This document shows, piece after piece, positions 531-53,957 of a stretch of DNA of 64,000 nucleotides. The notes under the pieces are model-generated. The model did not search any database and was not told the DNA's origin. It was given only the letters and a program-made list of their open reading frames with translations. Every line of letters starts with the position of its first letter. The first letter of the stretch is position 1. The position numbers and the translations under genes were made by a program. The DNA is taken from the IMG/VR virus record IMGVR_UViG_3300030102_006934, positions 1 through 64,000 of that record. The stretch is one strand, 5' to 3'.

Positions 531-548
531 TATATTTATAATAAAAGA
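531..548 (+). promoter_or_regulatory. Putative late-promoter motif TATTTATA
   Basis: TATATTTATAATAAAAGA is identical over 18 bp to 4983-5000; both copies lie just upstream of virion-type genes. Confidence 0.55.
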
Positions 549-4982: not shown

Positions 4983-5000
4983 TATATTTATAATAAAAGA
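4983..5000 (+). promoter_or_regulatory. Putative late-promoter motif TATTTATA
   Basis: Same 18-mer as 531-548, ending 6 nt before the ATG at 5007. Confidence 0.55.
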
Positions 5001-8000: not shown

Positions 8001-9458
8001 TTTCTTAAAAAAGAAGTATTAATCGGTGACACTTTAGGTGATTCTAGATTCGAATTAGTTAAAGGTTTAGGTCAAATAAGTAGTAGTTCTTGTATCGCAA
8101 ACGGAGCAACATACACCAAAGCTTGTAAAAAAGACAGATATACTGAAATTAAAATAGAATATGACCCAAGTTTAAAACCAAAAGAAGAAGCGGTTGAGGA
8201 AAAAAAACCAGAAGTTAAAAAAACAAAAACAGTATCAATACCAAAAGGTAGATTTTTTACGGAGACTCATTATTTTAAAAAGTTAAAAGAAAGTGATGAA
8301 TTTATCTATAGAGATATAAGAGATAAAATAAAATATTTTCACCCTTCATTTCACAGTATGACACCAGAAGGATTTAACTCCAGGCTTAATTTTCTACATC
8401 AATGCACTAGACAAGGACCTACAACAAATGGAGTTGGAAATCCTAATAATTTAGCCTTTGGTAGACCACCAATTTGCATACTTAGAATTGGTGATTTTTA
8501 TCATACCAAAATAGCAATTGACTCAATGACATTAGATTATGAACCATTAGTATGGGACTTAAACCCAGAAGGTGTAGGTGTTCAACCTATGATTGCTAAT
8601 GTAACAATTAGCTTTGCATTTATAGGAGGGTCTAGTTTAGAGGGTCCGATAAATAAATTACAAAATGCAATATCATATAACTTCTATGCTAATACTGAGA
8701 TATACGATGCTAGAGCAGATAGAATTACTATTAACAAAGACTTACAAGCAAATGATGAAGGTAAGGGTTATGGGGAATTAGTACCAGGAGAATCACCAAA
8801 TTCACCAGTAGTTAAGTTAAAAAATAATGAAGACAAAGAAGGGTTAAATGATATTGATAAAGACCAAGAAGCAGTTGCCGACAATGAAGCTAATAAACCA
8901 GAAGTAGCTGAAGAACCAGAAAAAAGTGAGGATTATAAACACCTTAAAGATATTGTATTAGTTAATTTTTTTAATGATGATGATAAAATAATTTCATTTA
9001 AAGCAAGTGATTTAGATTTTCTTAGTGATGGGTGGAATTATAGATTTGGTGTGAATAACGGAACTTCAAATATAGCCTTAAAAAATGGCCCTATAAAACA
9101 AGAAGATTTAACAGATAATGGTAGTCTAATAGTAAATACTGGAGTTAAAACTTTTGACATGATAAAGTCAAATAATGGAATAACATTATATGGAAAGACA
9201 TTTAAAGATTATTATGATAACAATGAAATAGACCAATCATTAACATGTTATAGTGCAAATACCTCTGAATTAAAAGTTGACGGAGCCTTACTATATGTTG
9301 AGTTCTATAAAAACGGGGAAGATAAGGTTTTTAAAAGCAAATTTGATACTGGTTATACTTACTTTTATCAATGTGATTTTGATGATGAGATAAGAGGACA
9401 TATTGCCGATGGTAAGTATTCCGTAGAACAAAATTTGTTAGGATGTTTAATGTGTTAA
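5007..9458 (+). CDS. Large baseplate / tail-tube-initiator-like protein (two gp48/gp54-like segments) with an internal OmpA-like domain
   Basis: Tube-initiator-like segments WFPPYDISFNESTSVNWDRSNFIGRGEPLYTYNNTERTGSLSW and RPPICILRIGDFYHTKIAIDSMTLDYE...MIANVTISFAFIG. OmpA-like motif YFPND...KGYAS...NQKLSDNRANEIKDFL...GLG...DRYTEI. Follows the tape measure gene. Confidence 0.6.
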   Translation: MPSSINSLSPTFRDLLLNRNIVTDTISNNGLTTLLNGIGTPVNPSTQPEIIQPSEDIEVIGVFHRESDTIVNKYQGSLSDYEQYSVNYLPGNNNTTIAGNPWNNGIYDVNGSAAELLQANNDFIQVNTSNNAYLDTSQQTVSDIYTNPVNSQTGSYNDSEAELIDESNGFLETNVVKNMYSDEDSQIPTIVSYNSSTPKNGPYSPGDTNSTIGGSLAESTSNILGSSSEYLQTNTSNNIYLDVDKQTQVNIEYKSVTFQTGSYLDENNNVNVGGPDTQPFDIASSLLNGGGVGFDPNGGGLVSNADVRSSLSGRILTASGVINDTRLGQLSAGYLATAIGNNIAFELQENTIGKVNTNLTSLIKGGNLIIPNYKITVGSGILGKTGDLLERMTGAKIPLSLLKTSIFASESGWDTGNISRANSMLENTGKGQILQMFSNLNASTDPSLIGDKRNGFTPPLKNDKTGIGVNKEDSPSGSSYIYEDQLADGTNIINNGPAQLIGGFNDEFEGDVLASTSFGFGNLSSSQFGEFGRKQGVFSWGDTNNNYEALSGVSSTDGGEGISFALKTENPGESSANNFKNVNSLLYKTQELFKEGRMKTLVSGQGVKNETTTQLQISRKGLISKGSGVLSADALLGGNLEPHEVFCRTWSTFDRYDNNLDLQKSSGLIGGENGEFPNRPFGRASLDASVLDSTGFVNIGPTTDDEGNISDIKRFMFSIENLAWADDLQKLMPSEKGPGDPLSGLRGRIMWFPPYDISFNESTSVNWDRSNFIGRGEPLYTYNNTERTGSLSWKIIIDHPNYSNYFPKDWGNDEITSFYAGCLEYEPIREVILTPEENDEVEIDQNIEVEEKVDEQEPEAVLFNMYFPNDVGLINDKYENGLSGTTTADTINYSVNPTGEGFGIGVYKSGPQSNGAYSNRKYTDKTNFGLNGSNNKFKIGDKEINGYQDDIFISTLSEYMKNECKYCKIFLKGYASKQGQNSTKNQKLSDNRANEIKDFLKKEVLIGDTLGDSRFELVKGLGQISSSSCIANGATYTKACKKDRYTEIKIEYDPSLKPKEEAVEEKKPEVKKTKTVSIPKGRFFTETHYFKKLKESDEFIYRDIRDKIKYFHPSFHSMTPEGFNSRLNFLHQCTRQGPTTNGVGNPNNLAFGRPPICILRIGDFYHTKIAIDSMTLDYEPLVWDLNPEGVGVQPMIANVTISFAFIGGSSLEGPINKLQNAISYNFYANTEIYDARADRITINKDLQANDEGKGYGELVPGESPNSPVVKLKNNEDKEGLNDIDKDQEAVADNEANKPEVAEEPEKSEDYKHLKDIVLVNFFNDDDKIISFKASDLDFLSDGWNYRFGVNNGTSNIALKNGPIKQEDLTDNGSLIVNTGVKTFDMIKSNNGITLYGKTFKDYYDNNEIDQSLTCYSANTSELKVDGALLYVEFYKNGEDKVFKSKFDTGYTYFYQCDFDDEIRGHIADGKYSVEQNLLGCLMC

Positions 9459-9472
9459 AAAATAAATAAATT

Positions 9473-9790
9473 ATGCCAAGATATTTTGATAGATATGAAG
9501 CCTTTAGGGCTGATGAAGAGATTAAACCTATACCTGGTTTAAAAATAAATTTAGGTTTAGAAGATAAATCAGTTTTATATAAGATAGGTAAAACTAGACT
9601 TGACATTTTGAGTCAAAAGTATTATAATAACCCTTACCACGGTTGGTTAATATTATTAGCAAACCCACAATATGGTGGTTTAGAATTTGAAATAAAAGAT
9701 AGAGATGTTATTAGAGTACCCTACCCATTTGAAGATGCTATAGATAGGTACATAAACTCTGTTAACATTTACAAAGAGTTATATGGCTGA
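9473..9790 (+). CDS. gp53: Baseplate wedge subunit, T4 gp53-like / LysM-type
   Basis: TRLDILSQKYYNNPYHGWLILLANP matches the LysM/gp53/P2 gpX pattern (RLD.LS..YY.....W.I..AN). Lies between the tube initiator and the hub. Confidence 0.75.
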   Translation: MPRYFDRYEAFRADEEIKPIPGLKINLGLEDKSVLYKIGKTRLDILSQKYYNNPYHGWLILLANPQYGGLEFEIKDRDVIRVPYPFEDAIDRYINSVNIYKELYG

Positions 9791-12700
9791 TAAAGATAAA
9801 AAAAATAATGGTGATAGATTATTAGTATTTGAACCGAACCCAGAAGACAATAGAATTTTTTCAAATGAAGATTTATCTATAAATGTTGAATTAAACACCT
9901 TTAAAAAAAATAGGAGTATAATAAATTCTGGAATTGTAACAAATACTTCTGACGGTGGTAAAAATGGCCCCATAAAATTTATTGGCGGTAGTAAAACTGG
10001 TGAAGATGAAAAAACTGGGAAACCTATCTATAATCTAACAACTAATTACACTAATGCAACTACATCTTTCGATAAAAAAGATAGTGGTAGGGATTTAGAA
10101 ACATTAGGTATAGAAAATATACATATTAATTTCGATACAGCTTACACTCCTAAAATAACTATAAAATTTGTAGATATAAGAGGTAACGCAATATTCCAAC
10201 AAGGAAATGACTCAAAGTATAGTGCATTCTTTGAAATGCCTTACCCTATTTTTGAGTTAAAAGTAAAGGGATTCTATGGTAAACCAGTCACATATTGTCT
10301 ACATATGTATAAATGGAATTCAAATTTTAATAGTGAAACTGGTAATTTTGAAATAAAAGCTGAATTTATAGGATACACATATGCTTTATTAACTGATATG
10401 CTATTAGGCTTAATAAGAGCTGTAATAAAAACAAATAGAGGTAAAAAAATATGGGCTGAAGAACAACAGAAAGACCCATCACTAACTAGTATTGACGAAT
10501 TCATGGATAACGTTGATAAGTTAGGTGAAGAATTTGATAAGATAAAAAACGAAGACACAAATTTAACTAGAATTGAAGAGAGTAAATTAACATTAGATTT
10601 AATACAAAGATTAGAAGATAGGTTTAATTCATTAATGAAATCAATGTTAGATGGAAAAGAGTTTATACACGATAAAAACAATGGCATAGTTGTCACAACC
10701 GCAGAAAAAGCTAAAGAACAAGCTTTAATAGACCTAATAGAATCAGACAAAAAAGGCCTTGTAATACTACTAGACGGTGATGAAAGTACTGGTGAAAAGG
10801 GAGCTAATTCTAGTATTGAAAATGATGATTTTAAAATAGATTCAAACGAAATAATAGATTTTAAAACTAATGGTATTGGACCATTTAGTGGTGGAACAGG
10901 TCAGCTAGAAGAAACTAAAATTGCTAGTAAATTAGTAGAACTAGATAACGAAAAATTCAGTGGTGAAGATAATAAGGAAACTGAAAAAATGGTAAGTTTT
11001 ATAACAGATTATGGCCAAGCAGTAGACTTTCACATATTTGATTTGACTAAACAATTTAAAATACTAAATGAATTAAAAGAAAATATTGAAAAAAGAAATA
11101 AAGAAACTACAGAAAAATTAGCTAAAGATTTAGCAAAAAGTGCTGAAAATAGTTTAAACTTTAGACCAACAGTAAGGAATATAGTAAAAATGTTAGTCAA
11201 ACATTCAGAAGTATTTTTGAAAGTATTAAAAGATGTTTCCGATGAAGCATATAAAAGCACAAGTAGAAGTAAAAAAATAATTAAGAAACTAGACTTAAAA
11301 ACTTCAAATACAGATAGTGGTATTAATCAAAACAATACTAAAACTGAAAATGCTAAAATATACCCTTGGCCAGAATACTTTGAGAAAACAACTAACTCAG
11401 ATGGTGAAACAATACAAGAAGAGTCATGGATAGGTAATAAAATTTTACCTGGCACTGGCATGATTGAAGTTGATTTTGTTGAAGAATTATTAGAATTATT
11501 ATTAAAAGATTTTCAGGAAGACGAGGAAGAGTTAAACCAAAATCTAAACTTAACAGAAGTACCAAATTATTATCCAATATCACCATTAGACACAAACATA
11601 CCACAGTCCTCATCAAAAAAAAGTTATATTACTCAAAATCCATATAAAACAGCATTATCAACTGACGAAGGTAATAAAACAATCACAGAAGAAGCCATAA
11701 AAACACTAATGTTAAGAGCTTGGCTAGGGCTATCATTTTCAAACCCAAGTAGAATTAGTGGACCAATGAAGACCGCCATGGGCCAAATTGAGGCTGAAAA
11801 TTTATATAACGCATTATTAGACATCAATAATGATAAAAAAAGACAAATAATACAACAAATACAAAATATTGAAAAAGCTGAAGACATAATAAATTCTTAC
11901 GATATATTAGGTAGTACAAATAATAAAAATATGATGTCTTCATTTAGAATAACTACAGCTGGTGCTGGCGCAAATTTAAGTTTAATAGAGAACGGTGAAG
12001 ACGTATACTATCGGTATAGATATTTAATAACAGACCCCCAAGACGCTGATGAACCTTCCACTGCTGTTGCTATTTTACCAATAAATAAAGGTTTTAATGG
12101 TAAAAAATTTAAATCATCAACAAACGAATTAAAATTAAAAAGTTTTGAAGAACTAGTAGAACTTAGAGATGATTATTTTTTTATAGACAACTCAGGTAAT
12201 AGCCAACTTAATCAAGAATTCCCACTTTGGGATAAATTTATCGAACCAGGTTGTGAATTTTTTAAAATATTACACCCAAGTGATTATAATGGTTTAATTC
12301 AACAACCAGATTTTGCACAAACAACATTTACTGAAATATCTAAAAACCTTTTAAGTTTTTTTCAAGGTACAAATTCTGTTATTAATGATTTAATGGTATT
12401 ACAACAAAGTACTTTAAAGAATCCATCATACAATGATGTTAATTATAAACCAAATTCATTAAAATTGACAGAAGACACTAAGTATAAGCCTGCTGAACCT
12501 CTTTTTACGTATGGCGGTAGGTTAAAAGCAATGGAAATATTAAACATAAATTATGATTCAACCGTTCATAATAATTCAAGTTATTTAACCCCACAGAATA
12601 AACATTATAGAAAGAGAAATATGCCAGATGGTATATCAGATGTTTTATGTGCATATTGGGCACAGCCAAAAATGGTTAATACGTCTTCGCTTATACCAAG

Positions 12701-15389
12701 TAACCCGCAAAGTGCTTGTGGAACATATTTATCTAGAGGATTTAAAGAAGGTGCTAAGAATAAGGCTATTGCTGGGGCTACTTATACATGGAAATCTAAT
12801 TTTGAATATGATATTAATAACGATAACTCTCTTATGCCAGATAACTACACACTAAGTAAAACTCAGAATCAGTATAGAATATTACCCGAAGACTACGGAA
12901 AACAAAGAGAATTATTAGGTTTAGTAAATGGTGAAGCTGCAAATTTAAATGCGAATAGTGATAATAAAGTAACATCAGCATATTTTCCATATATAGAATT
13001 TAATGTACAGGGATATACTAATACTAATTCATATGTTAACAACAATTTAAGTTTATTCGGCTCAAGATTTTATTATGAGCAAGAAACAAATAAAGCTAGA
13101 GCTTTTTTATTTCTACACACCTTTGGTTTTCAAGGAATAGTTGGGGATATTAAAGACTATAGAAGCCAAACAAATACATTCGGTGAAAGCCCTCAAGTAC
13201 AACCAGATGTAAGTTTATTTGACAGAACATATATGGATACAACTGGTACTGATGAGGAAACATCGTTTAAGAGTTATGACGAAAGTCCAACAATTAAAGG
13301 ACTATTCAATAATTATGCATCATTTATAAAAGCTCCAAGATTGTGGTGTGCATTTATAGGTGGTTTATTATCTAGATATGAAGAAAAATTTGATATTAGA
13401 TTTACCTCTAAAGTTCCAGATGCAAACTACCCATATCTTATACCATGGATGAGAGAAGATACACCCTTACCAAATAAGAATCAATACTTAATAGATGTAG
13501 GTAGTTTAGCCTATGATAATGGAAAAAACCAAAGCGGTATGAATATAGGTACCGAATATGTAGGAATGACTAGCTCAGCCGTGAAATACGCTGGAATAGA
13601 TTCCACGTTATTAAGATTACCCCAATCAGTAAAAGATGAATTTATTAGGATATTTGATGAATTTGTACTTGGTGAGCTGAGTGAAACTGGAGAAGCTGGG
13701 TTTCAAGATGTAAGGAAACAATTTGAGTTAATGTACACTAAAGACCCAAAAGATTTCAGCACTGGCGGGGCTAAAGGCTGGGAACAACTACATGATAATC
13801 TAGTTTCCGCACAACACCGCAGCAACCCTGGTGTGGCACAACCTAATTATTTACTTAGGAATCCAAACCAAACTAAATTTACTGTTGGAAAATTAAAAGA
13901 AATTTTTACCGAAACCAATACTAGCGGACCCAGAATGTCAAAAGATGGTGACGGATTAAAAAACATGACATCAATTGTGGCCATTAGAGACCTTGGAATA
14001 GGTGGACTTACAGACCAGGCAAATACATGGGGTTTTACATGGCCGCAGAAGAAGGCGTGGCAAATTAATATTGTGTATAGAAGGGAATGTAAAGGTAGTG
14101 ATTTAATGAGAGATTTAGTTTCACAATACAAATGGGTTATGAATGGAAAACCACAAGTATTTAGAAGTTCTGAATTGAGATTTGGGCTACAAGACGGCCA
14201 ATTTCTAAAGAAGGTAGATTTAATTGTTTTTTTAGATGGTTTTTTAGCAAAATTTAAAACCCTATCAAAAGACTTTGATAAACAGATAGAACAAGAGAAA
14301 GACAAACTAGAGCAACAGATTTTCAAAACAATAGATGATGACACCATTAAATTGACTATATATAGGGAGCTAAGCTCAATTTATAATAAGTGGATTGCTG
14401 GTGCTGGAGCCACATCATCAACTTCATGTGCTAAAAGTGCATCTAAAAATGGCTTATTTAATAGTTTTAAATTTATAGATAGGTCTTACAATGACATAGG
14501 TGACAAATTCTTTATAAACCCATTTACAGTTAAAGAATTAATGTTAGGAAAACCTAATACAAACTTATTTACTTTATTAGATGTAATATTCAAAGATAAT
14601 AACTTTAATTTCATACCTCTACCAACATATATTGATTACAGTAAACCAAAAGATGTTTTAGAAGTTTTTAAACCATATCCTTACAGTAAAAGTTTTGATA
14701 CTAATCAAGGACCATCATTCGTATGTATGTATGTTGGCCAAACATCGAATAGTTTAGATTTAGGTAATAATTCACAATATCCAGATGATTCATTTACAGT
14801 ATTAGATTCTGGTAATAAAGGGTACATTATGACCAATGTGCCAGATGATTTTAAAACCTCTAGAGATAAAGACGGTAGAAGTTTAAATATACCATATTTT
14901 TTAGTTAGTTACGGTAGACAAAATCAGTCAATTTTTAAGTCTTTAAAACTAGACCAAAATGAATTTACGTCTACATTAGAAAGTTTAAATGTAGTTGAAG
15001 ATTTATCTCAGCTGGGTGATAAAACAAAGCCAACTTATAAAGGACAAAACCTTTGGAATGTTTATCAAAACAGGGCATATAGTTGTGAGATAGAGATGAT
15101 GGGTAATTCAATGATACAACCATTTATGTATTTTCAATTATCAAACGTACCAATGTTTAGGGGCGCTTATAGTATATTTAAAGTAACTCATAGTATAACA
15201 CCACATAATATGAAAACTAACTTTAAGGGTGTTAGAATTAAAAAAACTAGAACTCCATTAATTACTGAAGTTGAATTATATAGTAATTTATTATCGTACC
15301 TAAATTCAACAATAGACTCTTCAAAAGAGACTAGAAATAGAAATATAAAATATACATTAATGTCTTCACCAGGAGGTATTGTGATTTAA
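9783..15389 (+). CDS. Giant baseplate hub protein (gp27/gpD/VgrG-like ends with a very large insertion)
   Basis: N-terminal IHINFDTAYTPKITIKFVDIRG...YPIFELKVKGFYG and C-terminal YSCEIEMMGNSMIQPFMYFQLSNVPMFRGAYSIFKVTHSITPHNMKTNFKG are hub-like; 1868 aa; follows the gp53-like gene. Confidence 0.65.
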   Translation: MADKDKKNNGDRLLVFEPNPEDNRIFSNEDLSINVELNTFKKNRSIINSGIVTNTSDGGKNGPIKFIGGSKTGEDEKTGKPIYNLTTNYTNATTSFDKKDSGRDLETLGIENIHINFDTAYTPKITIKFVDIRGNAIFQQGNDSKYSAFFEMPYPIFELKVKGFYGKPVTYCLHMYKWNSNFNSETGNFEIKAEFIGYTYALLTDMLLGLIRAVIKTNRGKKIWAEEQQKDPSLTSIDEFMDNVDKLGEEFDKIKNEDTNLTRIEESKLTLDLIQRLEDRFNSLMKSMLDGKEFIHDKNNGIVVTTAEKAKEQALIDLIESDKKGLVILLDGDESTGEKGANSSIENDDFKIDSNEIIDFKTNGIGPFSGGTGQLEETKIASKLVELDNEKFSGEDNKETEKMVSFITDYGQAVDFHIFDLTKQFKILNELKENIEKRNKETTEKLAKDLAKSAENSLNFRPTVRNIVKMLVKHSEVFLKVLKDVSDEAYKSTSRSKKIIKKLDLKTSNTDSGINQNNTKTENAKIYPWPEYFEKTTNSDGETIQEESWIGNKILPGTGMIEVDFVEELLELLLKDFQEDEEELNQNLNLTEVPNYYPISPLDTNIPQSSSKKSYITQNPYKTALSTDEGNKTITEEAIKTLMLRAWLGLSFSNPSRISGPMKTAMGQIEAENLYNALLDINNDKKRQIIQQIQNIEKAEDIINSYDILGSTNNKNMMSSFRITTAGAGANLSLIENGEDVYYRYRYLITDPQDADEPSTAVAILPINKGFNGKKFKSSTNELKLKSFEELVELRDDYFFIDNSGNSQLNQEFPLWDKFIEPGCEFFKILHPSDYNGLIQQPDFAQTTFTEISKNLLSFFQGTNSVINDLMVLQQSTLKNPSYNDVNYKPNSLKLTEDTKYKPAEPLFTYGGRLKAMEILNINYDSTVHNNSSYLTPQNKHYRKRNMPDGISDVLCAYWAQPKMVNTSSLIPSNPQSACGTYLSRGFKEGAKNKAIAGATYTWKSNFEYDINNDNSLMPDNYTLSKTQNQYRILPEDYGKQRELLGLVNGEAANLNANSDNKVTSAYFPYIEFNVQGYTNTNSYVNNNLSLFGSRFYYEQETNKARAFLFLHTFGFQGIVGDIKDYRSQTNTFGESPQVQPDVSLFDRTYMDTTGTDEETSFKSYDESPTIKGLFNNYASFIKAPRLWCAFIGGLLSRYEEKFDIRFTSKVPDANYPYLIPWMREDTPLPNKNQYLIDVGSLAYDNGKNQSGMNIGTEYVGMTSSAVKYAGIDSTLLRLPQSVKDEFIRIFDEFVLGELSETGEAGFQDVRKQFELMYTKDPKDFSTGGAKGWEQLHDNLVSAQHRSNPGVAQPNYLLRNPNQTKFTVGKLKEIFTETNTSGPRMSKDGDGLKNMTSIVAIRDLGIGGLTDQANTWGFTWPQKKAWQINIVYRRECKGSDLMRDLVSQYKWVMNGKPQVFRSSELRFGLQDGQFLKKVDLIVFLDGFLAKFKTLSKDFDKQIEQEKDKLEQQIFKTIDDDTIKLTIYRELSSIYNKWIAGAGATSSTSCAKSASKNGLFNSFKFIDRSYNDIGDKFFINPFTVKELMLGKPNTNLFTLLDVIFKDNNFNFIPLPTYIDYSKPKDVLEVFKPYPYSKSFDTNQGPSFVCMYVGQTSNSLDLGNNSQYPDDSFTVLDSGNKGYIMTNVPDDFKTSRDKDGRSLNIPYFLVSYGRQNQSIFKSLKLDQNEFTSTLESLNVVEDLSQLGDKTKPTYKGQNLWNVYQNRAYSCEIEMMGNSMIQPFMYFQLSNVPMFRGAYSIFKVTHSITPHNMKTNFKGVRIKKTRTPLITEVELYSNLLSYLNSTIDSSKETRNRNIKYTLMSSPGGIVI

Positions 15390-29588: not shown

Positions 29589-32500
29589 ATGTCTAATAGT
29601 ATCAGGTTAAAAACCACACCTGGCGGTGATAATAAAAATATAAACGTATCAATAAATCAAGATTTTGATTTTATTGAGATATTATCATTAAAAATATCTC
29701 AAGATGAGGCCTATAGGAGATTTAGTTCGGACTATGGCTGTGTTGTTGGTAGAGTAATAATAAATAATGGTGTTGGGGTACCAAATGCTAAGGTATCCAT
29801 ATTTGTACCTGTAGAAGAGATAGACAAACTAGACCCAGAGATTTTTGGTCTATACCCATATGAAACGATATCAGACAAAAATTCAGACGGAATGCCATAC
29901 AGCTTACTACCATCAAATACAAATGGGGGTGACGAGTGTGCGGTAACAGTTGGTAGATTTGATACTAAAAGACAAATACAGGATAACCCAGAAAGCGAAG
30001 AAATTTATTGTAAATATTATAAATTTACGACAACAACAAATAACTCTGGTGATTATATGATATTTGGGGCACCAATTGGGGCACACAATGTACATGTTGA
30101 AGTTGATTTATCAGACATGGGGGTTTTAAGTCAAAAACCATATAATATGATAAATGAAGGGTCTAGCCCAAATTTATTTAAATCCCCAAATCAATTTAAA
30201 GGTACAAAGGAAAATATAGCGCCTATACAAAATAAAAAAGTGTCTCCAGTTGCGGTAAATGTAATCCCATTTTGGGGTGACAAAGAACAGTTTGAAGTTG
30301 GTATAACAAGACTAGACGTAGACTTATTAATGAATATAACGCCAACAGCAATATTTATGGGTTCAGTATTTACTGATACCGAAAAAAATAGTTTAAATAA
30401 AAAATGTAGACCTAGAAAAAAACTAGGCAAAATGGGTGAACTAATAACTGGGCCTGGAACTATAGAGATGATTAGAAAGGCATCTGATGGTGCTGTTGAA
30501 TTCTTAGATGTTGATGGGGGTCAATTAATAGACGAAAACGGAACTTGGTGTTATCAAGTACCTATGAATCTAGATTTAATGGTTACTTCTGAAAAAGGTG
30601 ATTTAGTTAAATCATTAGACGGTAAAAGTGGAATACCAACTAGAGCCGATGTTAGGTTTAGGGTGGGCATGGAAGTGAACGGAAATGAAGGTAGGGTAAG
30701 AACAAGAGCAAAATACCTAATACCAAATAATCCAACTAGCTATGCTGATTCCGACTATAGCTTTGACACAACAACACAAGCCCAAAGCTTTAAAACATTG
30801 CATTGGAATAAAATATATACTGTTAAAAATTATATAGCTAGAGTACAACCAAATAAGTCAGTTGAGAATAGAAATTTTATTGGCATAAAAAACTGTGATG
30901 ATGAACAGGGAAACAGCCCATTCCCATTTAATAGAATGGACTCAAAGGGTAATCCACTATTCAGTATTTTAATGGCCGTCATTGGAACCTTAGCCTTTTT
31001 ATGTTGGTTCATAAATATATCTATACTCTTAGTATTAAACACTATTTTAATGGGTATACAACAGTTAGTTTGGGGTATTCAGAAGGCTGTTTGTTTGTTA
31101 AAACACCCATTAAGCCCTAAAAAAGTGAGACAATGTAGGTGTTGTAAATTAATAGAGCTAACCGATGGCCTTCAAGGAAACCAATCTTGTTGTAACAACA
31201 AAAACAATTGTAGCTCTGGTGCATGTAAAAAATATAAACCACAAGCAGTTATACCATATATTAAACTTAGTTGTGACGGTGAAAAATATTTCTTGTGGAA
31301 TATTGGAACAAGCCCAGAAGCGCATGCAAAAACATGTCTAGACCTAGAAAATTTTGCTGGTCAGCAAATAGATTGCTTATATAGTGAACCAACAAACACC
31401 AATAAATCGATATCTGTTGGTAAATATTTAGAGTGTAATGCTATATTATTAGCTGACGCACTTAATGTATTTAAATTTGACTTTTATAATGACTGGATTA
31501 ATGGGACACTATATTTATTCTTGCTAAAATTTAAATATAAAAGGAATGGTAAACAAAAATTCTGTGATGTTGATTGTGATGATGACGTTTTAGGCGACTC
31601 AAACGGTGATAATAAAGCAGATAATAATTGTAAAAAGAATTATATACTTGATACTGCAACCAAACCAGAACCACAAGAGCAAAATCAAAATTCTGTGGGT
31701 AACATTAACATGATTAATAGTAAGCAGCACGATGAAATTGAGGAGGGTTATATAAAGAGAGGTACTGATGGAACACTATATTACTCAGCAATATCTAAAA
31801 GAACAGACAAACTTATATTTGCAACTGACATAATTAATCTAGGTTCTATAAATGAACGTGATTGGCAAGGCTCCCCTCAAATATATAAATCTCTAATTGA
31901 TACAACATTTAAAATACCACCAACCGTTGATGAAAACGATGAAGATAACCCATCACAGATAAATGTATCTGGATTTAATGGAGCAAATGATTTGATTTTC
32001 ACTTTTTCGATTAACGCTTTCCTACAGGTAACAGTTAAAAGCAACGATAGACAATGTAATAACATTAGACGTATTTGTGAATTAGGTATTGGCCTAGATG
32101 AAGATAGAACTGATTCTGGCCCAAATCCTGTTGACCTTGGAGAAGCTGATGGTAAGATAGCCAATAATGATGTTGAAAACCCATTTATAAGAGGTTTATT
32201 TACATATGTTAATTCAACCAATTTCCCTCAAAATATAAATTCAAGTATAAGTTTAGTTTATATTGATAGTAGTAACAACATTGAAACCAGTAATGGTTTC
32301 TCGAATTACAAAGACCCATTTTATGAGCCATTTAGAGGTTCTGAAAATTGGGCAAACTACTCAGGTGTTTACCAGTTTAAAAACTCATATTATTTTTATT
32401 TCGGTTTAGTTCCTGGTAAAAGCGCCTTAGTAAAATTAATTAGAGAATATCTAACACCTTGCTCTATAGAAGTCGATAATAGCTTTCAATGTGTTACAAA

Positions 32501-34055
32501 TACAATAATACCAGATGGTGATGAGGACGAACCAACAGGGTCAATAATAGCAGACGTTATAGGCGGTGTACCCCCACTAACATACACATGGACTGGACCA
32601 GAAATAAATGGTATAAATTACCCCCAATCAGGAAATATAATTAATAATGATTCAAGTTCAGAAATAATAGAATTATATTCTGGGGGTTATGAATTAACAG
32701 TTAGTGACGATGCTGGAAATATAACATCTTGTGCATTTCAAGTAGGTGGACCAGCTGGAGTATCATGTAGTGTAGATTTTGATGAGCCAAGTATTTCTGG
32801 TGGAGACGATGGGTCAATTGATTTAAACATAACTGATGGTTTACCGCCTTATAGCTGCACCCTAACACGAATAGACCCATCAACGCAGCAACCCACTGGT
32901 AACCCATCAACACAGCAAATAAATACTAGTTCTACTACTTTTGATGATTTAGAATCTGGATTTTACCTACTAGAAGTTTCTGATAGCTCAACTGTAGTAA
33001 GTACTTGTAGTCAGTATATCACACTTACTGAACCATCTTTACCTGAAGTAATTTTAACTGGGTCTAGCATTTCTTGTCTTGGTGGAGATGATGGACAGTT
33101 ACAGGCAATTATAGCTGACTCAAATGGAGGTTCACCAACAAAAGAATGGGGATTTCATAGCACATCACCAAGCGGACCATTCAGCTGGCCCCCAAATAAT
33201 TCACAAATATATAATTTCACAAATGGGCAGAATCAAACACCAACCGTCATTAATAATGTGGATGAATCTGGATATTATAAAATAACCTACACTGACGATT
33301 TAAACCAAACAGATTCTGATATTTACCAGGTTACAGAACCATCAACTTCACCGTATATAAAATTTGTTAAACCAAATAGTTATGATTTAGTTTACTGGTA
33401 TTTAGCACAAGCACCTACGAATAACAGCGGACCAATAATTAATACATTATCGATTGGTACTCCAAATATAGAGGGAGGGTATTCTGGAGTATATGTCGAA
33501 TGGCCCTACAATCCAGCAACACCAACTGTGTATTCTTATGAACATATTGAATTAGTACCATATACTGAGACAGGAGAGCTTGTAGATTCGTATACAGGTG
33601 TTGAAGGTGGAGATACTGGAAGCGGTGATGTACCAGGATATATTTTCCATTTCAAAGTAGATGGTGGTACACCACCATACACAGTAGTAGTGGAGGACGT
33701 TAATCTTGCTGCTAGTACCATAACTGAAATTGAAGAGTGGACAAACGTACAACCTAACACGGATTATAGTAGTAGGAATAATCTTACTTTCCACCATTAT
33801 ATTTATGGTGCTCTAGGCTACCCCTCCCGTTTTTTTAGATTTAAAGTTACAGATGCTAATGGGTGCTCCTCATACATTAGAGAGAACGAATCGGGTGTTC
33901 TAACTCCATCATCGACAATTAATTACGTTGGTCTCGGAAGTCCTGGTGATACGGATAATAACTCATGTAAATGGCACTCATCTCCATCAGTAGCGACTCC
34001 AACTGAAGTAACACTCGGGCCTAATAATTACACTATTTGGGTATTAAATTGTTAA
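29589..34055 (+). CDS. Large virion structural protein (baseplate/fibre) with carboxypeptidase-regulatory-like N-domain, hydrophobic plus Cys-rich middle, and SprB-like repeats
   Basis: VVGRVIINNGVGVPNAKVSIF; hydrophobic segment at about 30950-31100; repeats GSIIADVIGGVPPLTYTWTG, DDGSIDLNITDGLPPYSC, SCLGGDDGQLQA and DGGTPPYTV...KVTDANGCS. Confidence 0.7.
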   Translation: MSNSIRLKTTPGGDNKNINVSINQDFDFIEILSLKISQDEAYRRFSSDYGCVVGRVIINNGVGVPNAKVSIFVPVEEIDKLDPEIFGLYPYETISDKNSDGMPYSLLPSNTNGGDECAVTVGRFDTKRQIQDNPESEEIYCKYYKFTTTTNNSGDYMIFGAPIGAHNVHVEVDLSDMGVLSQKPYNMINEGSSPNLFKSPNQFKGTKENIAPIQNKKVSPVAVNVIPFWGDKEQFEVGITRLDVDLLMNITPTAIFMGSVFTDTEKNSLNKKCRPRKKLGKMGELITGPGTIEMIRKASDGAVEFLDVDGGQLIDENGTWCYQVPMNLDLMVTSEKGDLVKSLDGKSGIPTRADVRFRVGMEVNGNEGRVRTRAKYLIPNNPTSYADSDYSFDTTTQAQSFKTLHWNKIYTVKNYIARVQPNKSVENRNFIGIKNCDDEQGNSPFPFNRMDSKGNPLFSILMAVIGTLAFLCWFINISILLVLNTILMGIQQLVWGIQKAVCLLKHPLSPKKVRQCRCCKLIELTDGLQGNQSCCNNKNNCSSGACKKYKPQAVIPYIKLSCDGEKYFLWNIGTSPEAHAKTCLDLENFAGQQIDCLYSEPTNTNKSISVGKYLECNAILLADALNVFKFDFYNDWINGTLYLFLLKFKYKRNGKQKFCDVDCDDDVLGDSNGDNKADNNCKKNYILDTATKPEPQEQNQNSVGNINMINSKQHDEIEEGYIKRGTDGTLYYSAISKRTDKLIFATDIINLGSINERDWQGSPQIYKSLIDTTFKIPPTVDENDEDNPSQINVSGFNGANDLIFTFSINAFLQVTVKSNDRQCNNIRRICELGIGLDEDRTDSGPNPVDLGEADGKIANNDVENPFIRGLFTYVNSTNFPQNINSSISLVYIDSSNNIETSNGFSNYKDPFYEPFRGSENWANYSGVYQFKNSYYFYFGLVPGKSALVKLIREYLTPCSIEVDNSFQCVTNTIIPDGDEDEPTGSIIADVIGGVPPLTYTWTGPEINGINYPQSGNIINNDSSSEIIELYSGGYELTVSDDAGNITSCAFQVGGPAGVSCSVDFDEPSISGGDDGSIDLNITDGLPPYSCTLTRIDPSTQQPTGNPSTQQINTSSTTFDDLESGFYLLEVSDSSTVVSTCSQYITLTEPSLPEVILTGSSISCLGGDDGQLQAIIADSNGGSPTKEWGFHSTSPSGPFSWPPNNSQIYNFTNGQNQTPTVINNVDESGYYKITYTDDLNQTDSDIYQVTEPSTSPYIKFVKPNSYDLVYWYLAQAPTNNSGPIINTLSIGTPNIEGGYSGVYVEWPYNPATPTVYSYEHIELVPYTETGELVDSYTGVEGGDTGSGDVPGYIFHFKVDGGTPPYTVVVEDVNLAASTITEIEEWTNVQPNTDYSSRNNLTFHHYIYGALGYPSRFFRFKVTDANGCSSYIRENESGVLTPSSTINYVGLGSPGDTDNNSCKWHSSPSVATPTEVTLGPNNYTIWVLNC

Positions 34056-51346: not shown

Positions 51347-52015
51347 ATGGAACTAAAAGATAACAAAAATGGTCTAATATTAGGTTTAGACGTTTCAACA
51401 AAGACTATAGGTATAGCTTTATTCGAAGACACTGGGGATGGTGGTAAATTAAGGTTATTACATCATGTATCACCAAAAATAAAACCAAAACCAGAAGATA
51501 AATTACAAGAACTTTTTGAGAAAGCAAATATATTTGAAGAGGAATTTTTAAATAAATACACTGACGTTGGTATAACAAGAGTAATAATAGAGGAACCATT
51601 ATTACGTTCAAACAACGTAAATACTGTTGCAACACTATTAAGATTTAATGGAATGATATCTAGGTCGGTTTATGACACATTAGGTATAGTACCAGAATTT
51701 ATATCATCATATGACTCTAGAAAATTTGCATTTCCAGAACTAATGCAAATTAGAAGAATTAATAAAAAAGGCCAACCATACAGCGAAAGAGAAATTTCTA
51801 AGAAAAACCCAGTACTATTTGGCGGTTATGATTGGGATGTTGATAAAAAAATAATAGTTTGGGAAAAAGTTGCAGATTTAGAACCTCAAGTAACTTGGTT
51901 ATACACTAGAACAAAAACTCTAAAAAAAGAGAACTTTGACATGACCGATGCATACTGTGCAGTTAAGGGTCACATGGCTAAAACTGGTGAATGGTCAAGT
52001 GAACTAGCCCATTAG
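51347..52015 (+). CDS. ruvC: RuvC-like Holliday junction resolvase
   Basis: ILGLDVSTKTIGIA, VIIEEP and FDMTDAYCA give the RNase H-fold D/E/D/D catalytic set. Confidence 0.85.
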   Translation: MELKDNKNGLILGLDVSTKTIGIALFEDTGDGGKLRLLHHVSPKIKPKPEDKLQELFEKANIFEEEFLNKYTDVGITRVIIEEPLLRSNNVNTVATLLRFNGMISRSVYDTLGIVPEFISSYDSRKFAFPELMQIRRINKKGQPYSEREISKKNPVLFGGYDWDVDKKIIVWEKVADLEPQVTWLYTRTKTLKKENFDMTDAYCAVKGHMAKTGEWSSELAH

Positions 52016-52053: not shown

Positions 52054-52998
52054 ATGTCAATCATAGCAAACATATTTAAACGCTTTTTAGGTGACCCACA
52101 CGAACACAATGAAGAATCTGGTCAGATGTCATTTGATTGCCCCTCTTGTGCCGAAATGGGCAAAGGAAAGGGTAAGCATAAGTTAGCATTAAATTACAAA
52201 AAAAATATATTTAGATGTTGGGTTTGTGGGTTTGAAAACAACATGCATGGTAAAATACCTTATTTAATCAAGAGGTATGGTAATAAAAATATACTTAAGG
52301 ACTATATTTTATTAAAACCAGATGATGATTATAAAAAAGACTTTAGGGAAAGAACCGCAACCAAGATAGAACTACCAAAAGGTTTTACAAAATTAACACA
52401 AAACAACTCAGATAAATTCAAGTTTGATTCAGCCTATAAATATATAAAAAATAGGGGTATAACTGATGAAATGATAGAATATTATAACATTGGTTATACG
52501 GTGGTAGGTAAATATCATGATAGAGTTATATTACCTTCATATGATGAGTTTGGTGACGTGAATTATTTTGTTGCTAGAGCGTGGGATAAATGGAAAAGCC
52601 CAAAGTATCTAAATCCAGTGGCCGAAAAAGAATTAATAGTATTTAATGAAGACAAAATAAATTGGGACTCTACAATATATCTTGTTGAAGGGGCATTTGA
52701 CCACATAACAGTACCAAATTCAATAGCTTTATTAGGTAAAATGTTACCAGAAAAACTAAAGTACTTACTACACACCAAAGCCAAATCAAAGGTGGTGGTT
52801 TTACTAGATGAAGATGCACATGAAAATGCTATTAAAATTTATAGAGACTTAAATTGTGGTAATTTATATAATAAGATTATGATTTGTGTTCCACCAAATA
52901 GGTATGACCCATCATTAATATTTGAAAAATTGGGTTCTGATGGTGTGATAAAATTACTTAGGAACTCATACAAGATACCAGAAAGTAAATTGTATTAA
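52054..52998 (+). CDS. dnaG: DNA primase (Zn finger plus TOPRIM); ORF track start 52048
   Basis: FDCPSC...FRCWVCG, YIKNRGI, RVILPSY, YFVARA, KYLNP, YLVEGAFD and VLLDED. Confidence 0.9.
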   Translation: MSIIANIFKRFLGDPHEHNEESGQMSFDCPSCAEMGKGKGKHKLALNYKKNIFRCWVCGFENNMHGKIPYLIKRYGNKNILKDYILLKPDDDYKKDFRERTATKIELPKGFTKLTQNNSDKFKFDSAYKYIKNRGITDEMIEYYNIGYTVVGKYHDRVILPSYDEFGDVNYFVARAWDKWKSPKYLNPVAEKELIVFNEDKINWDSTIYLVEGAFDHITVPNSIALLGKMLPEKLKYLLHTKAKSKVVVLLDEDAHENAIKIYRDLNCGNLYNKIMICVPPNRYDPSLIFEKLGSDGVIKLLRNSYKIPESKLY

Positions 52999-53315
52999 TT
53001 ATCTTTTTCTTCATAAGACTCACTATTAGGTAAGTCTTTTTCTATTTGTAATGACCAAAGTGATTTATTTGGAACGATTAGCTTCCTACCAGAGCCATAA
53101 ACATAGAATGTAGTTTTCCAAATTGTCTGTCTAACTATCCTAGCTTTTTTAGTTCCTTTAATATAAACTATATCATCAATGTCAAAATCACTACCCATTA
53201 GAAACTGAAACCCCTTAAAGAAATTACTCATAGTATCTTTAAAAAATAAACCAACGATAGCGGTAATAACCAACCAACCCCATTCACCAATATATTCAGA
53301 TAAAATATCCTCCAC
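52995..53315 (-). CDS. Minimal MscS-like membrane protein (pore helix TM3 plus beta domain only)
   Basis: VGLFFKDTMSNFFKG...FDIDDIVYI...TIWKTTF...LIVPN aligns by eye to the MscS pattern VGLALQGSLSNLAAG...FRAGEYVDL...QIFSTTM...IVIPN. GTG start overlaps the TAG of the upstream minus-strand gene. Confidence 0.7.
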   Translation of the reverse strand: MEDILSEYIGEWGWLVITAIVGLFFKDTMSNFFKGFQFLMGSDFDIDDIVYIKGTKKARIVRQTIWKTTFYVYGSGRKLIVPNKSLWSLQIEKDLPNSESYEEKDN

Positions 53316-53866
53316 TAACTCATTGATTTTATTAATTCTTCTTTATTAGGAGCTATGTTGGCGACACACATATCAGCAATATTATTTGAAACACATGTTA
53401 TACCTGGCTCGTTATTTAATTTAGACCAAATTCTAGGCACTTGATTTAAATTTTGTCTTCTACCCTTACCAGAATATACATGACCAAACTCCATAATCAT
53501 AGCCATATATATTTTATAACCTAGACCTAAACCCCTCAATGACTCATCTAATGAAATATGTATTTGATAAAATATATCACCAACTAATTGTATATCTAAA
53601 GCAATACCATGACTAAAATCTTTATCTAATGGTAAAGATACTTTAATTTTAACTGGTGAAGACTCATTTTTTGGTTCCAAAATTATATCTTTATAAGATA
53701 AACTTTTAATTTTTTCTTTATCTAACTCACTAACATGAACACTTTTAGTTAAAGACAATGTGGGTGAATCATATTCAGATAACTCATATTCATCTTTAGA
53801 TGCATCACCTATAACATGACTGTATTTTAAACTTTCCCTAACCCTGTTTCTTATAAATTCCTTCAT
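53315..53866 (-). CDS. Hypothetical protein with GNAT-like acetyl-CoA-binding motif
   Basis: QIHISLDESLRGLGLGYKIYMAMI fits GNAT motif A (R/QxxGxG); later VPRIWSKL helix; N-terminal MKEFIRNRVRESL leader. Confidence 0.55.
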   Translation of the reverse strand: MKEFIRNRVRESLKYSHVIGDASKDEYELSEYDSPTLSLTKSVHVSELDKEKIKSLSYKDIILEPKNESSPVKIKVSLPLDKDFSHGIALDIQLVGDIFYQIHISLDESLRGLGLGYKIYMAMIMEFGHVYSGKGRRQNLNQVPRIWSKLNNEPGITCVSNNIADMCVANIAPNKEELIKSMS

Positions 53867-53879
53867 AACTTTGTTTTAT

Positions 53880-53887
53880 AATAAATA
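53880..53887 (-). promoter_or_regulatory. Putative late-promoter motif TATTTATT on the minus strand
   Basis: Reverse complement of AATAAATA, 13 nt upstream of the minus-strand ATG at 53866. Confidence 0.5.
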
Positions 53888-53888
53888 C

Positions 53889-53919
53889 TTGTTTTTTAAG
53901 TAAAAAAATGTTATATTAG
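53889..53919 (+). promoter_or_regulatory. Bacteroidota-type early promoter (variant)
   Basis: TTG 53889-53891, 20-nt spacer, TATATTAG 53912-53919; back-to-back with the minus-strand motif. Confidence 0.55.
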
Positions 53920-53957
53920 TGAGAATTAATAAAGTTTTATAAAATACACATTTCATT

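What the first reader, a model, noticed from the sequence alone, without database searches (positions are those of the whole stretch)
52995..53315. Phage-encoded 'pore-only' mini-MscS channel
Seen: a 106-aa protein with a single hydrophobic helix leading into GLFFKDTMSNFFKG, FDIDDIVYI, TIWKTTF and LIVPN. This matches MscS TM3a/TM3b and the beta (Sm-like) domain in order and spacing. The TM1-TM2 tension-sensing paddle and the C-terminal alpha/beta cage are absent. Known: MscS is a heptamer whose TM3 lines the pore. Inference: it could (i) form a tension-independent pore (holin-like timing or depolarisation for superinfection exclusion), or (ii) co-assemble with and poison or retune host MscS to control turgor during infection. 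It lies in the only minus-strand operon, behind a late-type motif and coupled to a GNAT-like gene. This is the strongest candidate here for an undescribed system.
Basis: partly seen in the sequence, partly recalled or inferred. Interest (0 to 1): 0.8.

Follow-up and report, generated by a model that had tools for sequence, protein, structure and literature searches.

The report
Phage one-helix mini-MscS channel homologue
A marine jumbo phage carries an intact 106-residue relative of the bacterial pressure-relief channel MscS that keeps only the pore helix and the ring-forming beta domain; it belongs to a large, conserved, almost virus-only family whose function nobody has tested.

Summary
It aligns with the TM3a/TM3b helix plus beta-domain of YnaI and MscS. 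Its AlphaFold model (pLDDT 88.7) finds only MscS-family channels in the PDB.

It is not a decayed fragment:
- About 170 clusters at 50% identity, nearly all 80-165 aa, share the architecture.
- Synonymous sites are saturated while pN is 0.2-0.4.
- Atlas clusters are 83-100% viral.
- More than 360 IMG/VR contigs carry it.

The proposed two-gene system is not supported. The upstream 183-aa gene does have a GNAT-like fold, but related jumbo phages keep that gene in the same slot without the mini-MscS. Elsewhere the mini-MscS follows PAP2, an amidase endolysin, PhoH or other genes. It behaves as a mobile stand-alone accessory gene, and 25 of 123 loci hold two paralogues.

Most likely it assembles by itself into a minimal MscS-type pore, expressed late. 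Whether it vents turgor or depolarises the membrane for lysis is open, and no channel activity has been shown. The closest characterised relative is the 165-aa TcMscS. One cultured phage, PANV1 (gp51), has a distant member mentioned in a single sentence. I class it as a new variant of a known kind, of moderately high interest.

The parts
52995..53315 (-). CDS of the 106-aa mini-MscS (GTG start, TAA stop)
   Evidence: identical protein P0001 on contigs up to 380 kb
53241..53291 (-). Residues 9-25: short hydrophobic helix homologous to the pore-lining TM3a. It has an aromatic belt [YW]12-G13-W14, a uniformly hydrophobic core at 15-25, and L/F23 at the position of the EcMscS gate residue L109.
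53196..53240 (-). Residues 26-40: amphipathic TM3b-like helix with conserved K26, N31 (=N117) and G35 (=G121 hinge)
53028..53177 (-). Residues 47-96: MscS beta (Sm-like) domain. It carries the DD-IVYI, KKARIVRQ, KTTFY, VPN and EKxLP motifs, and its net charge in the family is about +6.
53315..53866 (-). Upstream 183-aa gene with a GNAT-like fold. Its stop overlaps the mini-MscS start by 1 nt. It has its own family of 49 clusters with a near-invariant RGLGLG motif.
53874..53887 (-). Promoter-like 14-mer TATTTATTATAAAA, ending 7 nt (6 intervening bases) before the ATG of the 183-aa gene. The same 14-mer class lies at 533-546 and 4985-4998 (+) ahead of tail-module genes.
   Evidence: variants in relatives:
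53867..53957 (.). 91-bp divergent intergenic region between the minus-strand pair and the plus-strand exonuclease gene

Best explanation
The gene encodes a stand-alone, self-assembling minimal MscS-type pore subunit.

Proposed mechanism (inferred unless marked as shown):
- The acidic, amphipathic N-terminal 11 residues are placed outside the membrane. An 11-14-residue hydrophobic helix homologous to the pore-lining TM3a sits in the inner membrane.
- The TM3b-like amphipathic helix lies at the cytoplasmic interface, followed by a basic beta domain in the cytoplasm. This N-out/C-in topology is the same as TM3 of MscS.
- Seven copies are expected to form the TM3 bundle and beta-domain ring that make up the core of every solved MscS channel. 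In phages with two paralogues the ring may be mixed.
- The sensor paddle and cage are absent and the hydrophobic span is short. Opening would therefore be governed directly by the surrounding lipids, as shown for the miniature TcMscS.
- The pore would let ions and small solutes cross the host inner membrane late in infection. It would either vent turgor or dissipate the membrane potential as a heptameric 'pinhole' that helps time lysis.

Shown here: the homology, the fold, the architecture, purifying selection, the restriction to viruses and the variable gene neighbourhood. The gene is a mobile accessory gene, not half of a fixed pair with the GNAT-like gene.

Inferred: oligomeric state, pore activity, gating, timing of expression and physiological role.
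For: Homology and fold:
- Pfam, PDB sequence and structure matches cover exactly the TM3 and beta-domain parts.
- The hinge residues N31 and G35 and the hydrophobic L/F at the L109 position are conserved across 89 diverse members.
- The acidic N-terminus and the +6 beta domain fit an N-out/C-in topology.

Selection and distribution:
- Among the 150 best of 170 clusters at 50% identity, almost all are 80-165 aa. Full-length MscS proteins appear only at E of about 1e-4.
- pS is 0.6-0.9 against pN of 0.2-0.4. Median dN/dS is 0.24 over the 169 unsaturated pairs.
- Atlas clusters are 83-100% viral.
- Only 3 hits appear among 185,579 species genomes, all on contigs of metagenome-assembled genomes.
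- 37 and 325 IMG/VR contigs carry the family in the two scans.

Self-sufficiency:
- At least six different upstream partners are seen.
- The gene is absent from the same slot in related jumbo phages.
- 25 of 123 loci hold two paralogues.

Precedent:
- TcMscS (N helix, TM2, TM3, beta domain; no cage) is a working heptameric mechanosensitive channel gated by pore lipids (PMC12334622).

Late or envelope context:
- The promoter-like 14-mer is shared with tail-module genes.
- PANV1 gp51 is a lone antisense gene with a perfect TATAAATA 24 nt upstream of its ATG.
- In clade-I phages an Amidase_2 endolysin lies 0.9-2.3 kb upstream in 11 loci, and it overlaps the mini-MscS start in L026. A TM-anchored glucosaminidase follows the gene in 6 loci. 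A PAP2 lipid phosphatase overlaps its start in 14-15 loci.
Against: - No experiment of any kind exists, and no multimer model could be run.
- The hydrophobic core is short. It scores below a standard TM threshold (Kyte-Doolittle 19-residue maximum 1.39). PANV1 gp51 likewise had only about 0.6 TMHMM probability (PMC9239159).
- The Gly/Ala packing pattern of EcMscS TM3a is only partly kept.
- No MscS lacking TM2 has been shown to work.
- No metatranscriptome run listed holds the operon, so late expression rests on motifs alone.
- TATAAATA is not enriched in the PANV1 stretch (7 found, 5.9 expected).
- The link to peptidoglycan hydrolases is confined to one syntenic phage lineage. It is absent in the window (replication genes) and in the PhoH/sigma-factor lineage.
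Confidence: 0.45

Rival explanations
1. Host-channel modulator. The subunit co-assembles with the host's own MscS-family channels through the shared TM3 and beta-domain interfaces. It then blocks, locks open or retunes them (a dominant-negative or poisoning effect).
For: It keeps exactly the parts that make the inter-subunit contacts in solved MscS heptamers. Phages commonly use truncated mimics of host proteins (general knowledge, not tested here).
Against: - Identity to cellular MscS proteins is only 16-27%, and full-length proteins score E of about 1e-4 to 1e-5. It is therefore not a recent copy of any host channel.
- The family has its own invariant residues that MscS lacks: the G-E-[WY]-G-W belt, D47, R59, R62, K78, E92 and K93.
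- It occurs in phage lineages whose neighbouring genes hint at different host groups: Flavobacteriaceae-type relatives, a Paraglaciecola phage, and loci with DUF1559/N_methyl genes.
- Paralogue pairs within one phage point to partners supplied by the phage itself.
Confidence: 0.12
2. Not a pore. It is a membrane-tethered basic beta-domain that recruits or regulates other proteins or lipids at the inner membrane, such as the PAP2 phosphatase or the hydrolases encoded next to it. In this reading the MscS-derived helix serves only as an anchor.
For: The beta domain carries about +6 net charge and has family-specific invariant charged residues. The hydrophobic segment is weak and short. The gene's start overlaps the stop of various upstream enzyme genes.
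Against: Conservation is as strong in the TM3b hinge (K26, N31, G35) and at the gate-equivalent position as in the beta domain, which an anchor would not need. The partners vary, so there is no single client.
Confidence: 0.2
3. A two-gene system in which the GNAT-like acetyltransferase and the mini-MscS work together.
For: The stop and start overlap by 1 nt and the two genes share a promoter-like motif in the window. The pair is kept in near-identical contigs.
Against: The 183-aa family occurs alone in the same slot in L046 (289-kb contig) and L048 (214-kb contig). No other mini-MscS locus out of about 120 has this neighbour. In the tree the window's copy sits among copies from a different phage lineage, which suggests recent insertion.
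Confidence: 0.05
4. A decayed fragment of a full-length MscS gene, or a chance ORF.
For: None beyond its small size.
Against: Hundreds of full-length homologues share the same boundaries, synonymous sites are saturated with low pN, and the model is confident.
Confidence: 0.01

Closest known systems
TcMscS, the miniature MscS of Trypanosoma cruzi (165 aa; PDB 9bgq/9bgu; PMC12334622, PMC8282336)
   Same: Both lack TM1 and the C-terminal alpha/beta cage. Both keep TM3a/TM3b and the beta domain, and both have a hydrophobic span too short for a flat bilayer. TcMscS appears among the Foldseek hits (TM 0.59-0.60). It is a working heptameric mechanosensitive channel and was called the minimal functional unit.
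   Different: TcMscS still has an N helix and TM2. The phage protein has a single helix and is about 60 residues shorter. TcMscS is eukaryotic and cellular, whereas the phage family is viral. Activity has been shown only for TcMscS.
Bacterial MscS family (EcMscS, H. pylori MscS, YnaI, MscK, MscM) and plant MSL10/FLYC1
   Same: Pfam PF00924 beta domain, the TM3b hinge (N117/G121 equivalents), the PN motif, and the fold. An L/F sits at the gate position, as in the MscS L109 and FLYC1/MSL10 Phe gates.
   Different: The phage protein has no TM1-TM2 paddle, no cage and no side portals. An Ala/Gly replaces L105, and the Gly/Ala packing is weaker. A family-specific aromatic belt and charged residues are present. 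Identity is 16-27%.
PANV1 gp51 (Paraglaciecola Antarctic GD virus 1, MW805361; PMC9239159)
   Same: It is 102 aa with the same one-helix plus beta-domain layout, and it matches the family HMM end to end (46.8 bits). It is also a lone antisense gene in an early/replication region.
   Different: It is only 22% identical to the window protein and sits in a T4-like myovirus of a gammaproteobacterium. It was only annotated and mentioned in one sentence, and has never been studied.
Viral MscS/MscL-like genes of large eukaryotic DNA viruses (AaV 261 aa, Sylvanvirus 651 aa; PMC6163359)
   Same: They are virus-encoded MscS homologues of unknown role. They rank 4th and 5th among BFVD fold hits.
   Different: They keep several TM helices and a cage, infect eukaryotes, and are unrelated in origin. 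Phage one-helix forms are not covered in that survey.
Pinholins (phage 21 S21 68) and class III holins
   Same: Both are small phage membrane proteins with a charged cytoplasmic end. Pinholins form roughly heptameric nanometre pores that depolarise the membrane (recalled from the literature, not tested here). Some relatives sit beside peptidoglycan hydrolases.
   Different: There is no sequence or profile relationship (no Pfam or PHROG holin hit). The topology and fold differ, and the window copy is not near any lysis gene.

Membership tests
MscS superfamily | Beta (Sm-like) domain matching Pfam PF00924 above the gathering score | tested here: met
   32.5 bits against a 20.2 cut-off, E=9.3e-8, residues 27-91
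MscS superfamily | Pore-lining TM3a helix running into an amphipathic TM3b with the conserved hinge, directly before the beta domain | tested here: met
   Alignments to YnaI, HpMscS and EcMscS. N31=N117 and G35=G121 are conserved in 52 and 73 of 89 members respectively.
MscS superfamily | Three-dimensional fold of the TM3 plus beta-domain core | tested here: met
   AF2 pLDDT 88.7. The top 50 Foldseek PDB hits are all MscS-family chains, with probability 1.00 and TM 0.52-0.65.
MscS superfamily | TM1-TM2 tension-sensing paddle | tested here: not met
   Only about 8-11 residues precede the single helix
MscS superfamily | C-terminal alpha/beta cage with side portals | tested here: not met
   The protein ends about 10 residues after the beta domain. 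The last conserved residue is P96.
MscS superfamily | Heptameric assembly and tension-gated conductance | not testable with these tools
   No multimer prediction or experiment was available
TcMscS-type miniature MscS | N helix, TM2, TM3 and beta domain, without a cage | tested here: not met
   The cage is absent, as in TcMscS, but TM2 and the N helix are also absent
Holin / pinholin | Membership of a described holin family | tested here: not met
   No holin hit in Pfam or PHROGs at E<=10 / E<=1
Holin / pinholin | Small protein with at least one TM helix and a charged C-terminus, encoded next to the endolysin | tested here: inconclusive
   Size, helix and charge fit. It lies adjacent or close to peptidoglycan hydrolases in one phage lineage, but not in the window or other lineages.
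GNAT acetyltransferases (for the 183-aa neighbour) | GNAT fold with the R/Q-x-x-G-x-G/A acetyl-CoA loop | tested here: inconclusive
   Foldseek top hits are all GNAT domains but with TM of only 0.31-0.43. The RGLGLG motif is near-invariant. Atlas leads point to Acetyltransf_1. There is no Pfam hit.
Known anti-phage defence proteins | Match to a PADLOC model | tested here: not met
   No hit for either gene of the pair

The most novel reading that the evidence does not exclude
A single TM3 helix plus the beta domain is enough to build a working, lipid- or tension-gated heptameric channel. That would make it the smallest MscS known, smaller than the TcMscS 'minimal functional unit'. Marine phages of several lineages would then deploy it late in infection as a new class of membrane-permeabilising lysis or turgor-control protein, in some phages as mixed rings of two paralogues.
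Probability: 0.3. Interest if true: 0.8.

Novelty: new variant of a known kind. Interest (0 to 1): 0.62.

Why it matters
For channel biophysics, a natural, abundant and strongly conserved TM3-plus-beta-domain protein would test directly which parts of MscS are needed for assembly, conduction and force-from-lipid gating. It goes one step beyond TcMscS.

For phage biology, it would add an ion or solute pore of cellular origin to the known set of small phage membrane proteins. It is carried by many uncultured marine phages, including a 380-kb jumbo phage found in at least eight marine metagenome samples.

A cultured phage, PANV1, carries a distant member, so the question can be tested now.

Tried and rejected
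- **Expression evidence.** Two run searches and one read-laying run found no metatranscriptome that holds the operon. The single RNA contig maps to the RuvC-like gene at 51861-52013.
- **GenBank phages by tblastn.** The window protein and three diverse relatives gave nothing, even at E<=10 for the window protein. The tool does work on short queries, so BLAST-level relatives are absent from isolates. PANV1 gp51 was found only through a paper.
- **PHROGs.** No family matched the mini-MscS.
- **PADLOC.** No hit.
- **Broad alignment A1 for locus fetching.** A2 and A4 were used instead.
- **Lysis-cassette reading as a general rule.** Rejected, because the link to endolysins holds only in one syntenic lineage.
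- **Sigma-70 promoter and terminator scans.** Not above chance.
- **Exact 14-mer motif upstream of the GNAT-like homologues in relatives.** Not found. Only variants occur.
- **First ORF-clustering pass on lineage 2.** It wrongly merged PhoH with the mini-MscS family. This was corrected with an HMM scan of all six frames.
Full report
**1. The observation**

window:52995-53315 on the minus strand is an open reading frame of 106 codons. It starts at GTG, and that start shares one base with the TAG stop of the upstream 183-codon ORF, 53315-53866.

Pfam places residues 27-91 in PF00924 (MS_channel_2nd, the MscS beta domain) at E=9.3e-8 and 32.5 bits, above the curated 20.2-bit cut-off. A plain sequence search of the PDB aligns residues 19-93 with YnaI 154-228, which is TM3a, TM3b and the beta domain. 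A profile of 89 family members aligns the same span with H. pylori and E. coli MscS. This gives the following equivalences:

| Window protein | EcMscS |
|---|---|
| K26 | Q112 |
| L23 | L109 |
| A19 | L105 |
| N31 | N117 |
| G35 | G121 |
| P82-N83 | P166-N167 |

An AlphaFold2 model built on that alignment is confident (mean pLDDT 88.7). It shows one long helix (2-40) followed by a five-strand beta domain. Its 50 best Foldseek matches in the PDB are all MscS-family chains: EcMscS, HpMscS, YnaI, MscK, MSL1, MSL10, Flycatcher1 and TcMscS. The probability is 1.00 and the TM-score normalised to the query is 0.52-0.65. The protein has no room for TM1-TM2 or the alpha/beta cage.

**2. It is a family, not a fragment**

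- A word-indexed search found 91 clusters of 66-128 aa at 50-99% identity, from marine metagenomes.
- An exhaustive HMMER search of 1.84 billion representatives found 170 clusters at 50% identity. Nearly all are 80-165 aa. Full-length MscS proteins of 560-600 aa appear only at E of about 1e-4.
- The close relatives share 18 invariant columns.
- Over 41 coding sequences, synonymous sites are saturated (pS 0.6-0.9) while pN is 0.2-0.4. Median dN/dS is 0.24 over the 169 unsaturated pairs.
- The ESM Atlas holds several clusters of 105-114 aa 'MS channel beta-domain' proteins that are 83-100% viral.
- A scan of one genome for each of 185,579 prokaryotic species found three hits, all on contigs of metagenome-assembled genomes.
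- IMG/VR scans found 37 contigs with close relatives and 325 with a second subfamily.
- BFVD contains three unnamed proteins of 104-138 aa with the same fold, TM 0.68-0.80.

The refutation condition 'homologues are full-length and this copy is decayed' is therefore not met.

**3. The genome**

The window is part of IMGVR_UViG_3300030102_006934, 380,343 bp. It has about 30% G+C and almost every gene on the plus strand.

It encodes a tape-measure protein, baseplate wedge, tail-fibre-like proteins, SSB, UvsX-like recombinase, DnaB-like helicase, ribonucleotide reductase, RuvC-like resolvase, primase, an exonuclease and SbcCD. Its DNA is in at least eight marine metagenome samples.

Distant protein matches point to Tenacibaculum jumbo phages and to huge uncultured phages. 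A 77%-identical copy sits on a contig binned as Flavobacteriaceae. A Flavobacteriaceae host is therefore a reasonable guess, not a finding.

**4. The neighbour and the 'system'**

The 183-aa protein has no Pfam hit but has its own family of 49 clusters with a near-invariant RGLGLG motif. Its model (pLDDT 85.7) matches only GNAT domains, though weakly (TM 0.31-0.43). 'GNAT-like' is therefore fair.

The pairing is not conserved:

- In two related jumbo phages (L046, 289-kb contig; L048, 214-kb contig) the same antisense slot between exonuclease and primase holds the GNAT-like gene alone. An HMM scan of all six frames finds no mini-MscS there.
- A variant of the promoter-like motif sits before the GNAT-like gene in those phages too. 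The motif therefore belongs to that slot.
- A third relative, L027, has two mini-MscS genes near its primase and no GNAT-like gene.
- In a tree, the window's copy groups with copies from a different phage lineage, while L027's copies fall in the other main clade. This suggests transfer between phages.

**5. Neighbourhoods elsewhere**

*One lineage of roughly 150-200-kb genomes.* The mini-MscS start overlaps the stop of a PAP2 lipid phosphatase (14-15 loci), of a 95-aa protein (9 loci), or of a PG_binding_1+Amidase_2 endolysin (L026). That endolysin lies 0.9-2.3 kb upstream in 11 loci and up to 7.6 kb upstream in others. A glucosaminidase with an N-terminal hydrophobic anchor follows the gene in six loci. 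Thymidylate synthase, a HAD-like phosphatase, a CCA/poly(A) polymerase and a non-specific endonuclease are also nearby.

*The second, more abundant lineage.* The gene sits at a divergent junction next to PhoH, a sigma-70-like factor and a zinc-ribbon protein.

*Other groups.* The gene lies beside PurN-like, fatty-acid-hydroxylase-like or GroEL-like genes.

Of the 123 loci with a hit, 25 hold two paralogues, mostly adjacent and divergent. The gene therefore behaves as a stand-alone accessory gene. Its association with envelope and lysis genes is real but confined to one lineage.

**6. Anatomy and likely mechanism**

Across 89 members, the best-conserved positions fall into three groups:

- an aromatic belt (G10, [YW]12, G13, W14);
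- F25, K26, N31 and G35 in the TM3b-like helix;
- D47, D48, G54, R59, R62, T68, F70, K78, P82, N83, E92, K93 and P96 in the beta domain.

Residues 1-11 form an acidic amphipathic helix (hydrophobic moment 1.31, net charge -2). Residues 15-25 are uniformly hydrophobic. Residues 26-40 are amphipathic. The beta domain carries about +6. This predicts an N-out/C-in topology, like TM3 of MscS.

The hydrophobic core is only 11-14 residues and falls below a standard TM threshold. That recalls TcMscS, whose two short helices cannot span a flat bilayer and whose pore is plugged by lipids that leave under tension (PMC12334622). TcMscS shows that TM1 and the cage are dispensable for a heptameric mechanosensitive channel.

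I therefore infer a self-assembling heptameric TM3/beta-domain pore gated by the surrounding lipids, with L/F23 as the hydrophobic constriction. None of this was tested.

**7. Timing**

The 14-mer TATTTAT[AT]ATAAAA occurs exactly three times in the window (0.06 expected; 0 of 100 shuffles reach 3). Each copy lies 6-10 nt before a start codon. One precedes the operon that contains the tape-measure gene, one precedes the following 1483-codon gene, and one precedes the 183-codon gene.

In the cultured T4-like phage PANV1, the 102-aa family member gp51 matches the family HMM at 46.8 bits. It is a lone antisense gene among early and replication genes. It has a perfect T4 late-promoter box, TATAAATA, 24 nt upstream of its ATG, and that is the only minus-strand copy in 35 kb. 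The box is not enriched overall in that stretch.

Late expression is thus suggested twice, independently, but not shown. No listed metatranscriptome holds the operon.

**8. Role**

A late, small, self-assembling pore could vent turgor so that the cell does not burst early. Alternatively, it could depolarise the membrane like a pinholin and so time lysis.

The proximity to peptidoglycan hydrolases and to PAP2 in one lineage favours an envelope or lysis-stage role. The replication and PhoH contexts elsewhere do not. I cannot choose between the two on present evidence.

Co-assembly with host MscS is less likely. Identity to cellular channels is low, the family has its own invariant residues, the neighbouring genes hint at several host groups, and phages often bring their own second paralogue.

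**9. What is known**

Literature searches found:

- MscS- and MscL-like genes in large eukaryotic viruses (PMC6163359);
- viral MS-channel genes counted in a salinity survey (PMC13288924);
- one sentence on PANV1 gp51 (PMC9239159).

No description or test of a one-helix phage MscS family turned up in the held library. Some JGI records already name members 'small-conductance mechanosensitive channel'.

**Verdict**

This is a real feature and a new architectural variant of a known superfamily. It is widespread in marine phages and experimentally untouched. The 'system' with the GNAT-like gene is not supported.

Noticed in passing
L052, L055-L061, L064-L067, L069, L070, L072, L075, L076, L082, L086, L089 and others; L027:7302-7616 and 7977-8306: 25 of 123 phage loci carry two mini-MscS paralogues. 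The usual arrangement is an adjacent divergent pair: one of about 104 aa, and one of about 125-150 aa with a C-terminal extension. This raises the possibility of mixed rings.
   Followed up: partly
L130:12996-13304 (-), MW805361 27995-28303: The cultured Paraglaciecola myovirus PANV1 has a 102-aa family member, gp51. It is the only minus-strand gene in its neighbourhood and has a perfect T4-type late promoter box, TATAAATA, 24 nt upstream of its ATG.
   Followed up: partly
L001-L003:5285-6001, and L007, L008, L012, L014, L019-L025, L028: A phage-encoded PAP2-family lipid phosphatase ends 1-29 nt inside the mini-MscS start in 14-15 loci. Its substrate and its reason for being in a phage are unknown.
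   Followed up: no
L019-L024, e.g. L021:8703-9272: A 189-aa glucosaminidase (PF01832) with an N-terminal, weakly hydrophobic anchor lies one or two genes after the mini-MscS. It is a candidate signal-anchor-release endolysin. These phages also have a soluble Amidase_2 endolysin 5-6 kb upstream.
   Followed up: partly
L046:4001-4567, L048:4001-4495: Related jumbo phages keep the GNAT-like gene as a lone antisense gene between exonuclease and primase. A variant of the TATTTAT..AAA motif sits at the same distance from the start. The conserved antisense slot itself is unexplained.
   Followed up: partly
window 533-546, 4985-4998, 53874-53887: An exact 14-mer class, TATTTAT[AT]ATAAAA, lies 6-10 nt before three start codons (0.06 expected). 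It is a candidate phage promoter with almost no leader. That would fit a host without Shine-Dalgarno use.
   Followed up: partly
window 5007-9458, 9783-15389, 29589-34055: Three very large ORFs (1483, 1868 and 1488 codons) sit among tail and replication genes. The first has no PHROG hit; the other two were not examined.
   Followed up: no
L068:6420-7367 and 7367-8347; L058:7805-9343; L053:6426-6740: Phages of the second lineage encode tandem prepilin-type N_methyl/DUF1559 proteins, a 512-aa ankyrin-repeat protein and a small HMA (heavy-metal-associated) protein next to the mini-MscS. The DUF1559 pair may hint at a Planctomycetota-type host.
   Followed up: no
L043 (PAUJ01000025.1), L044, L045: The only three prokaryotic 'genome' hits are contigs of metagenome-assembled genomes labelled Flavobacteriaceae, Woesearchaeota and Thermoplasmatales. 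They are probably mis-binned phage contigs. The Flavobacteriaceae one is 77% identical to the window protein.
   Followed up: no
window 51861-52013: The only metatranscriptome contig laid on the 4-kb stretch covers the 3' end of the RuvC-like resolvase gene. It may be carried-over DNA.
   Followed up: no
window 52995-53315: tblastn of the window protein against 50,697 GenBank phage records returned nothing even at E<=10. This is odd for a database of that size. The tool does find PANV1 gp51 when gp51 itself is the query.
   Followed up: partly
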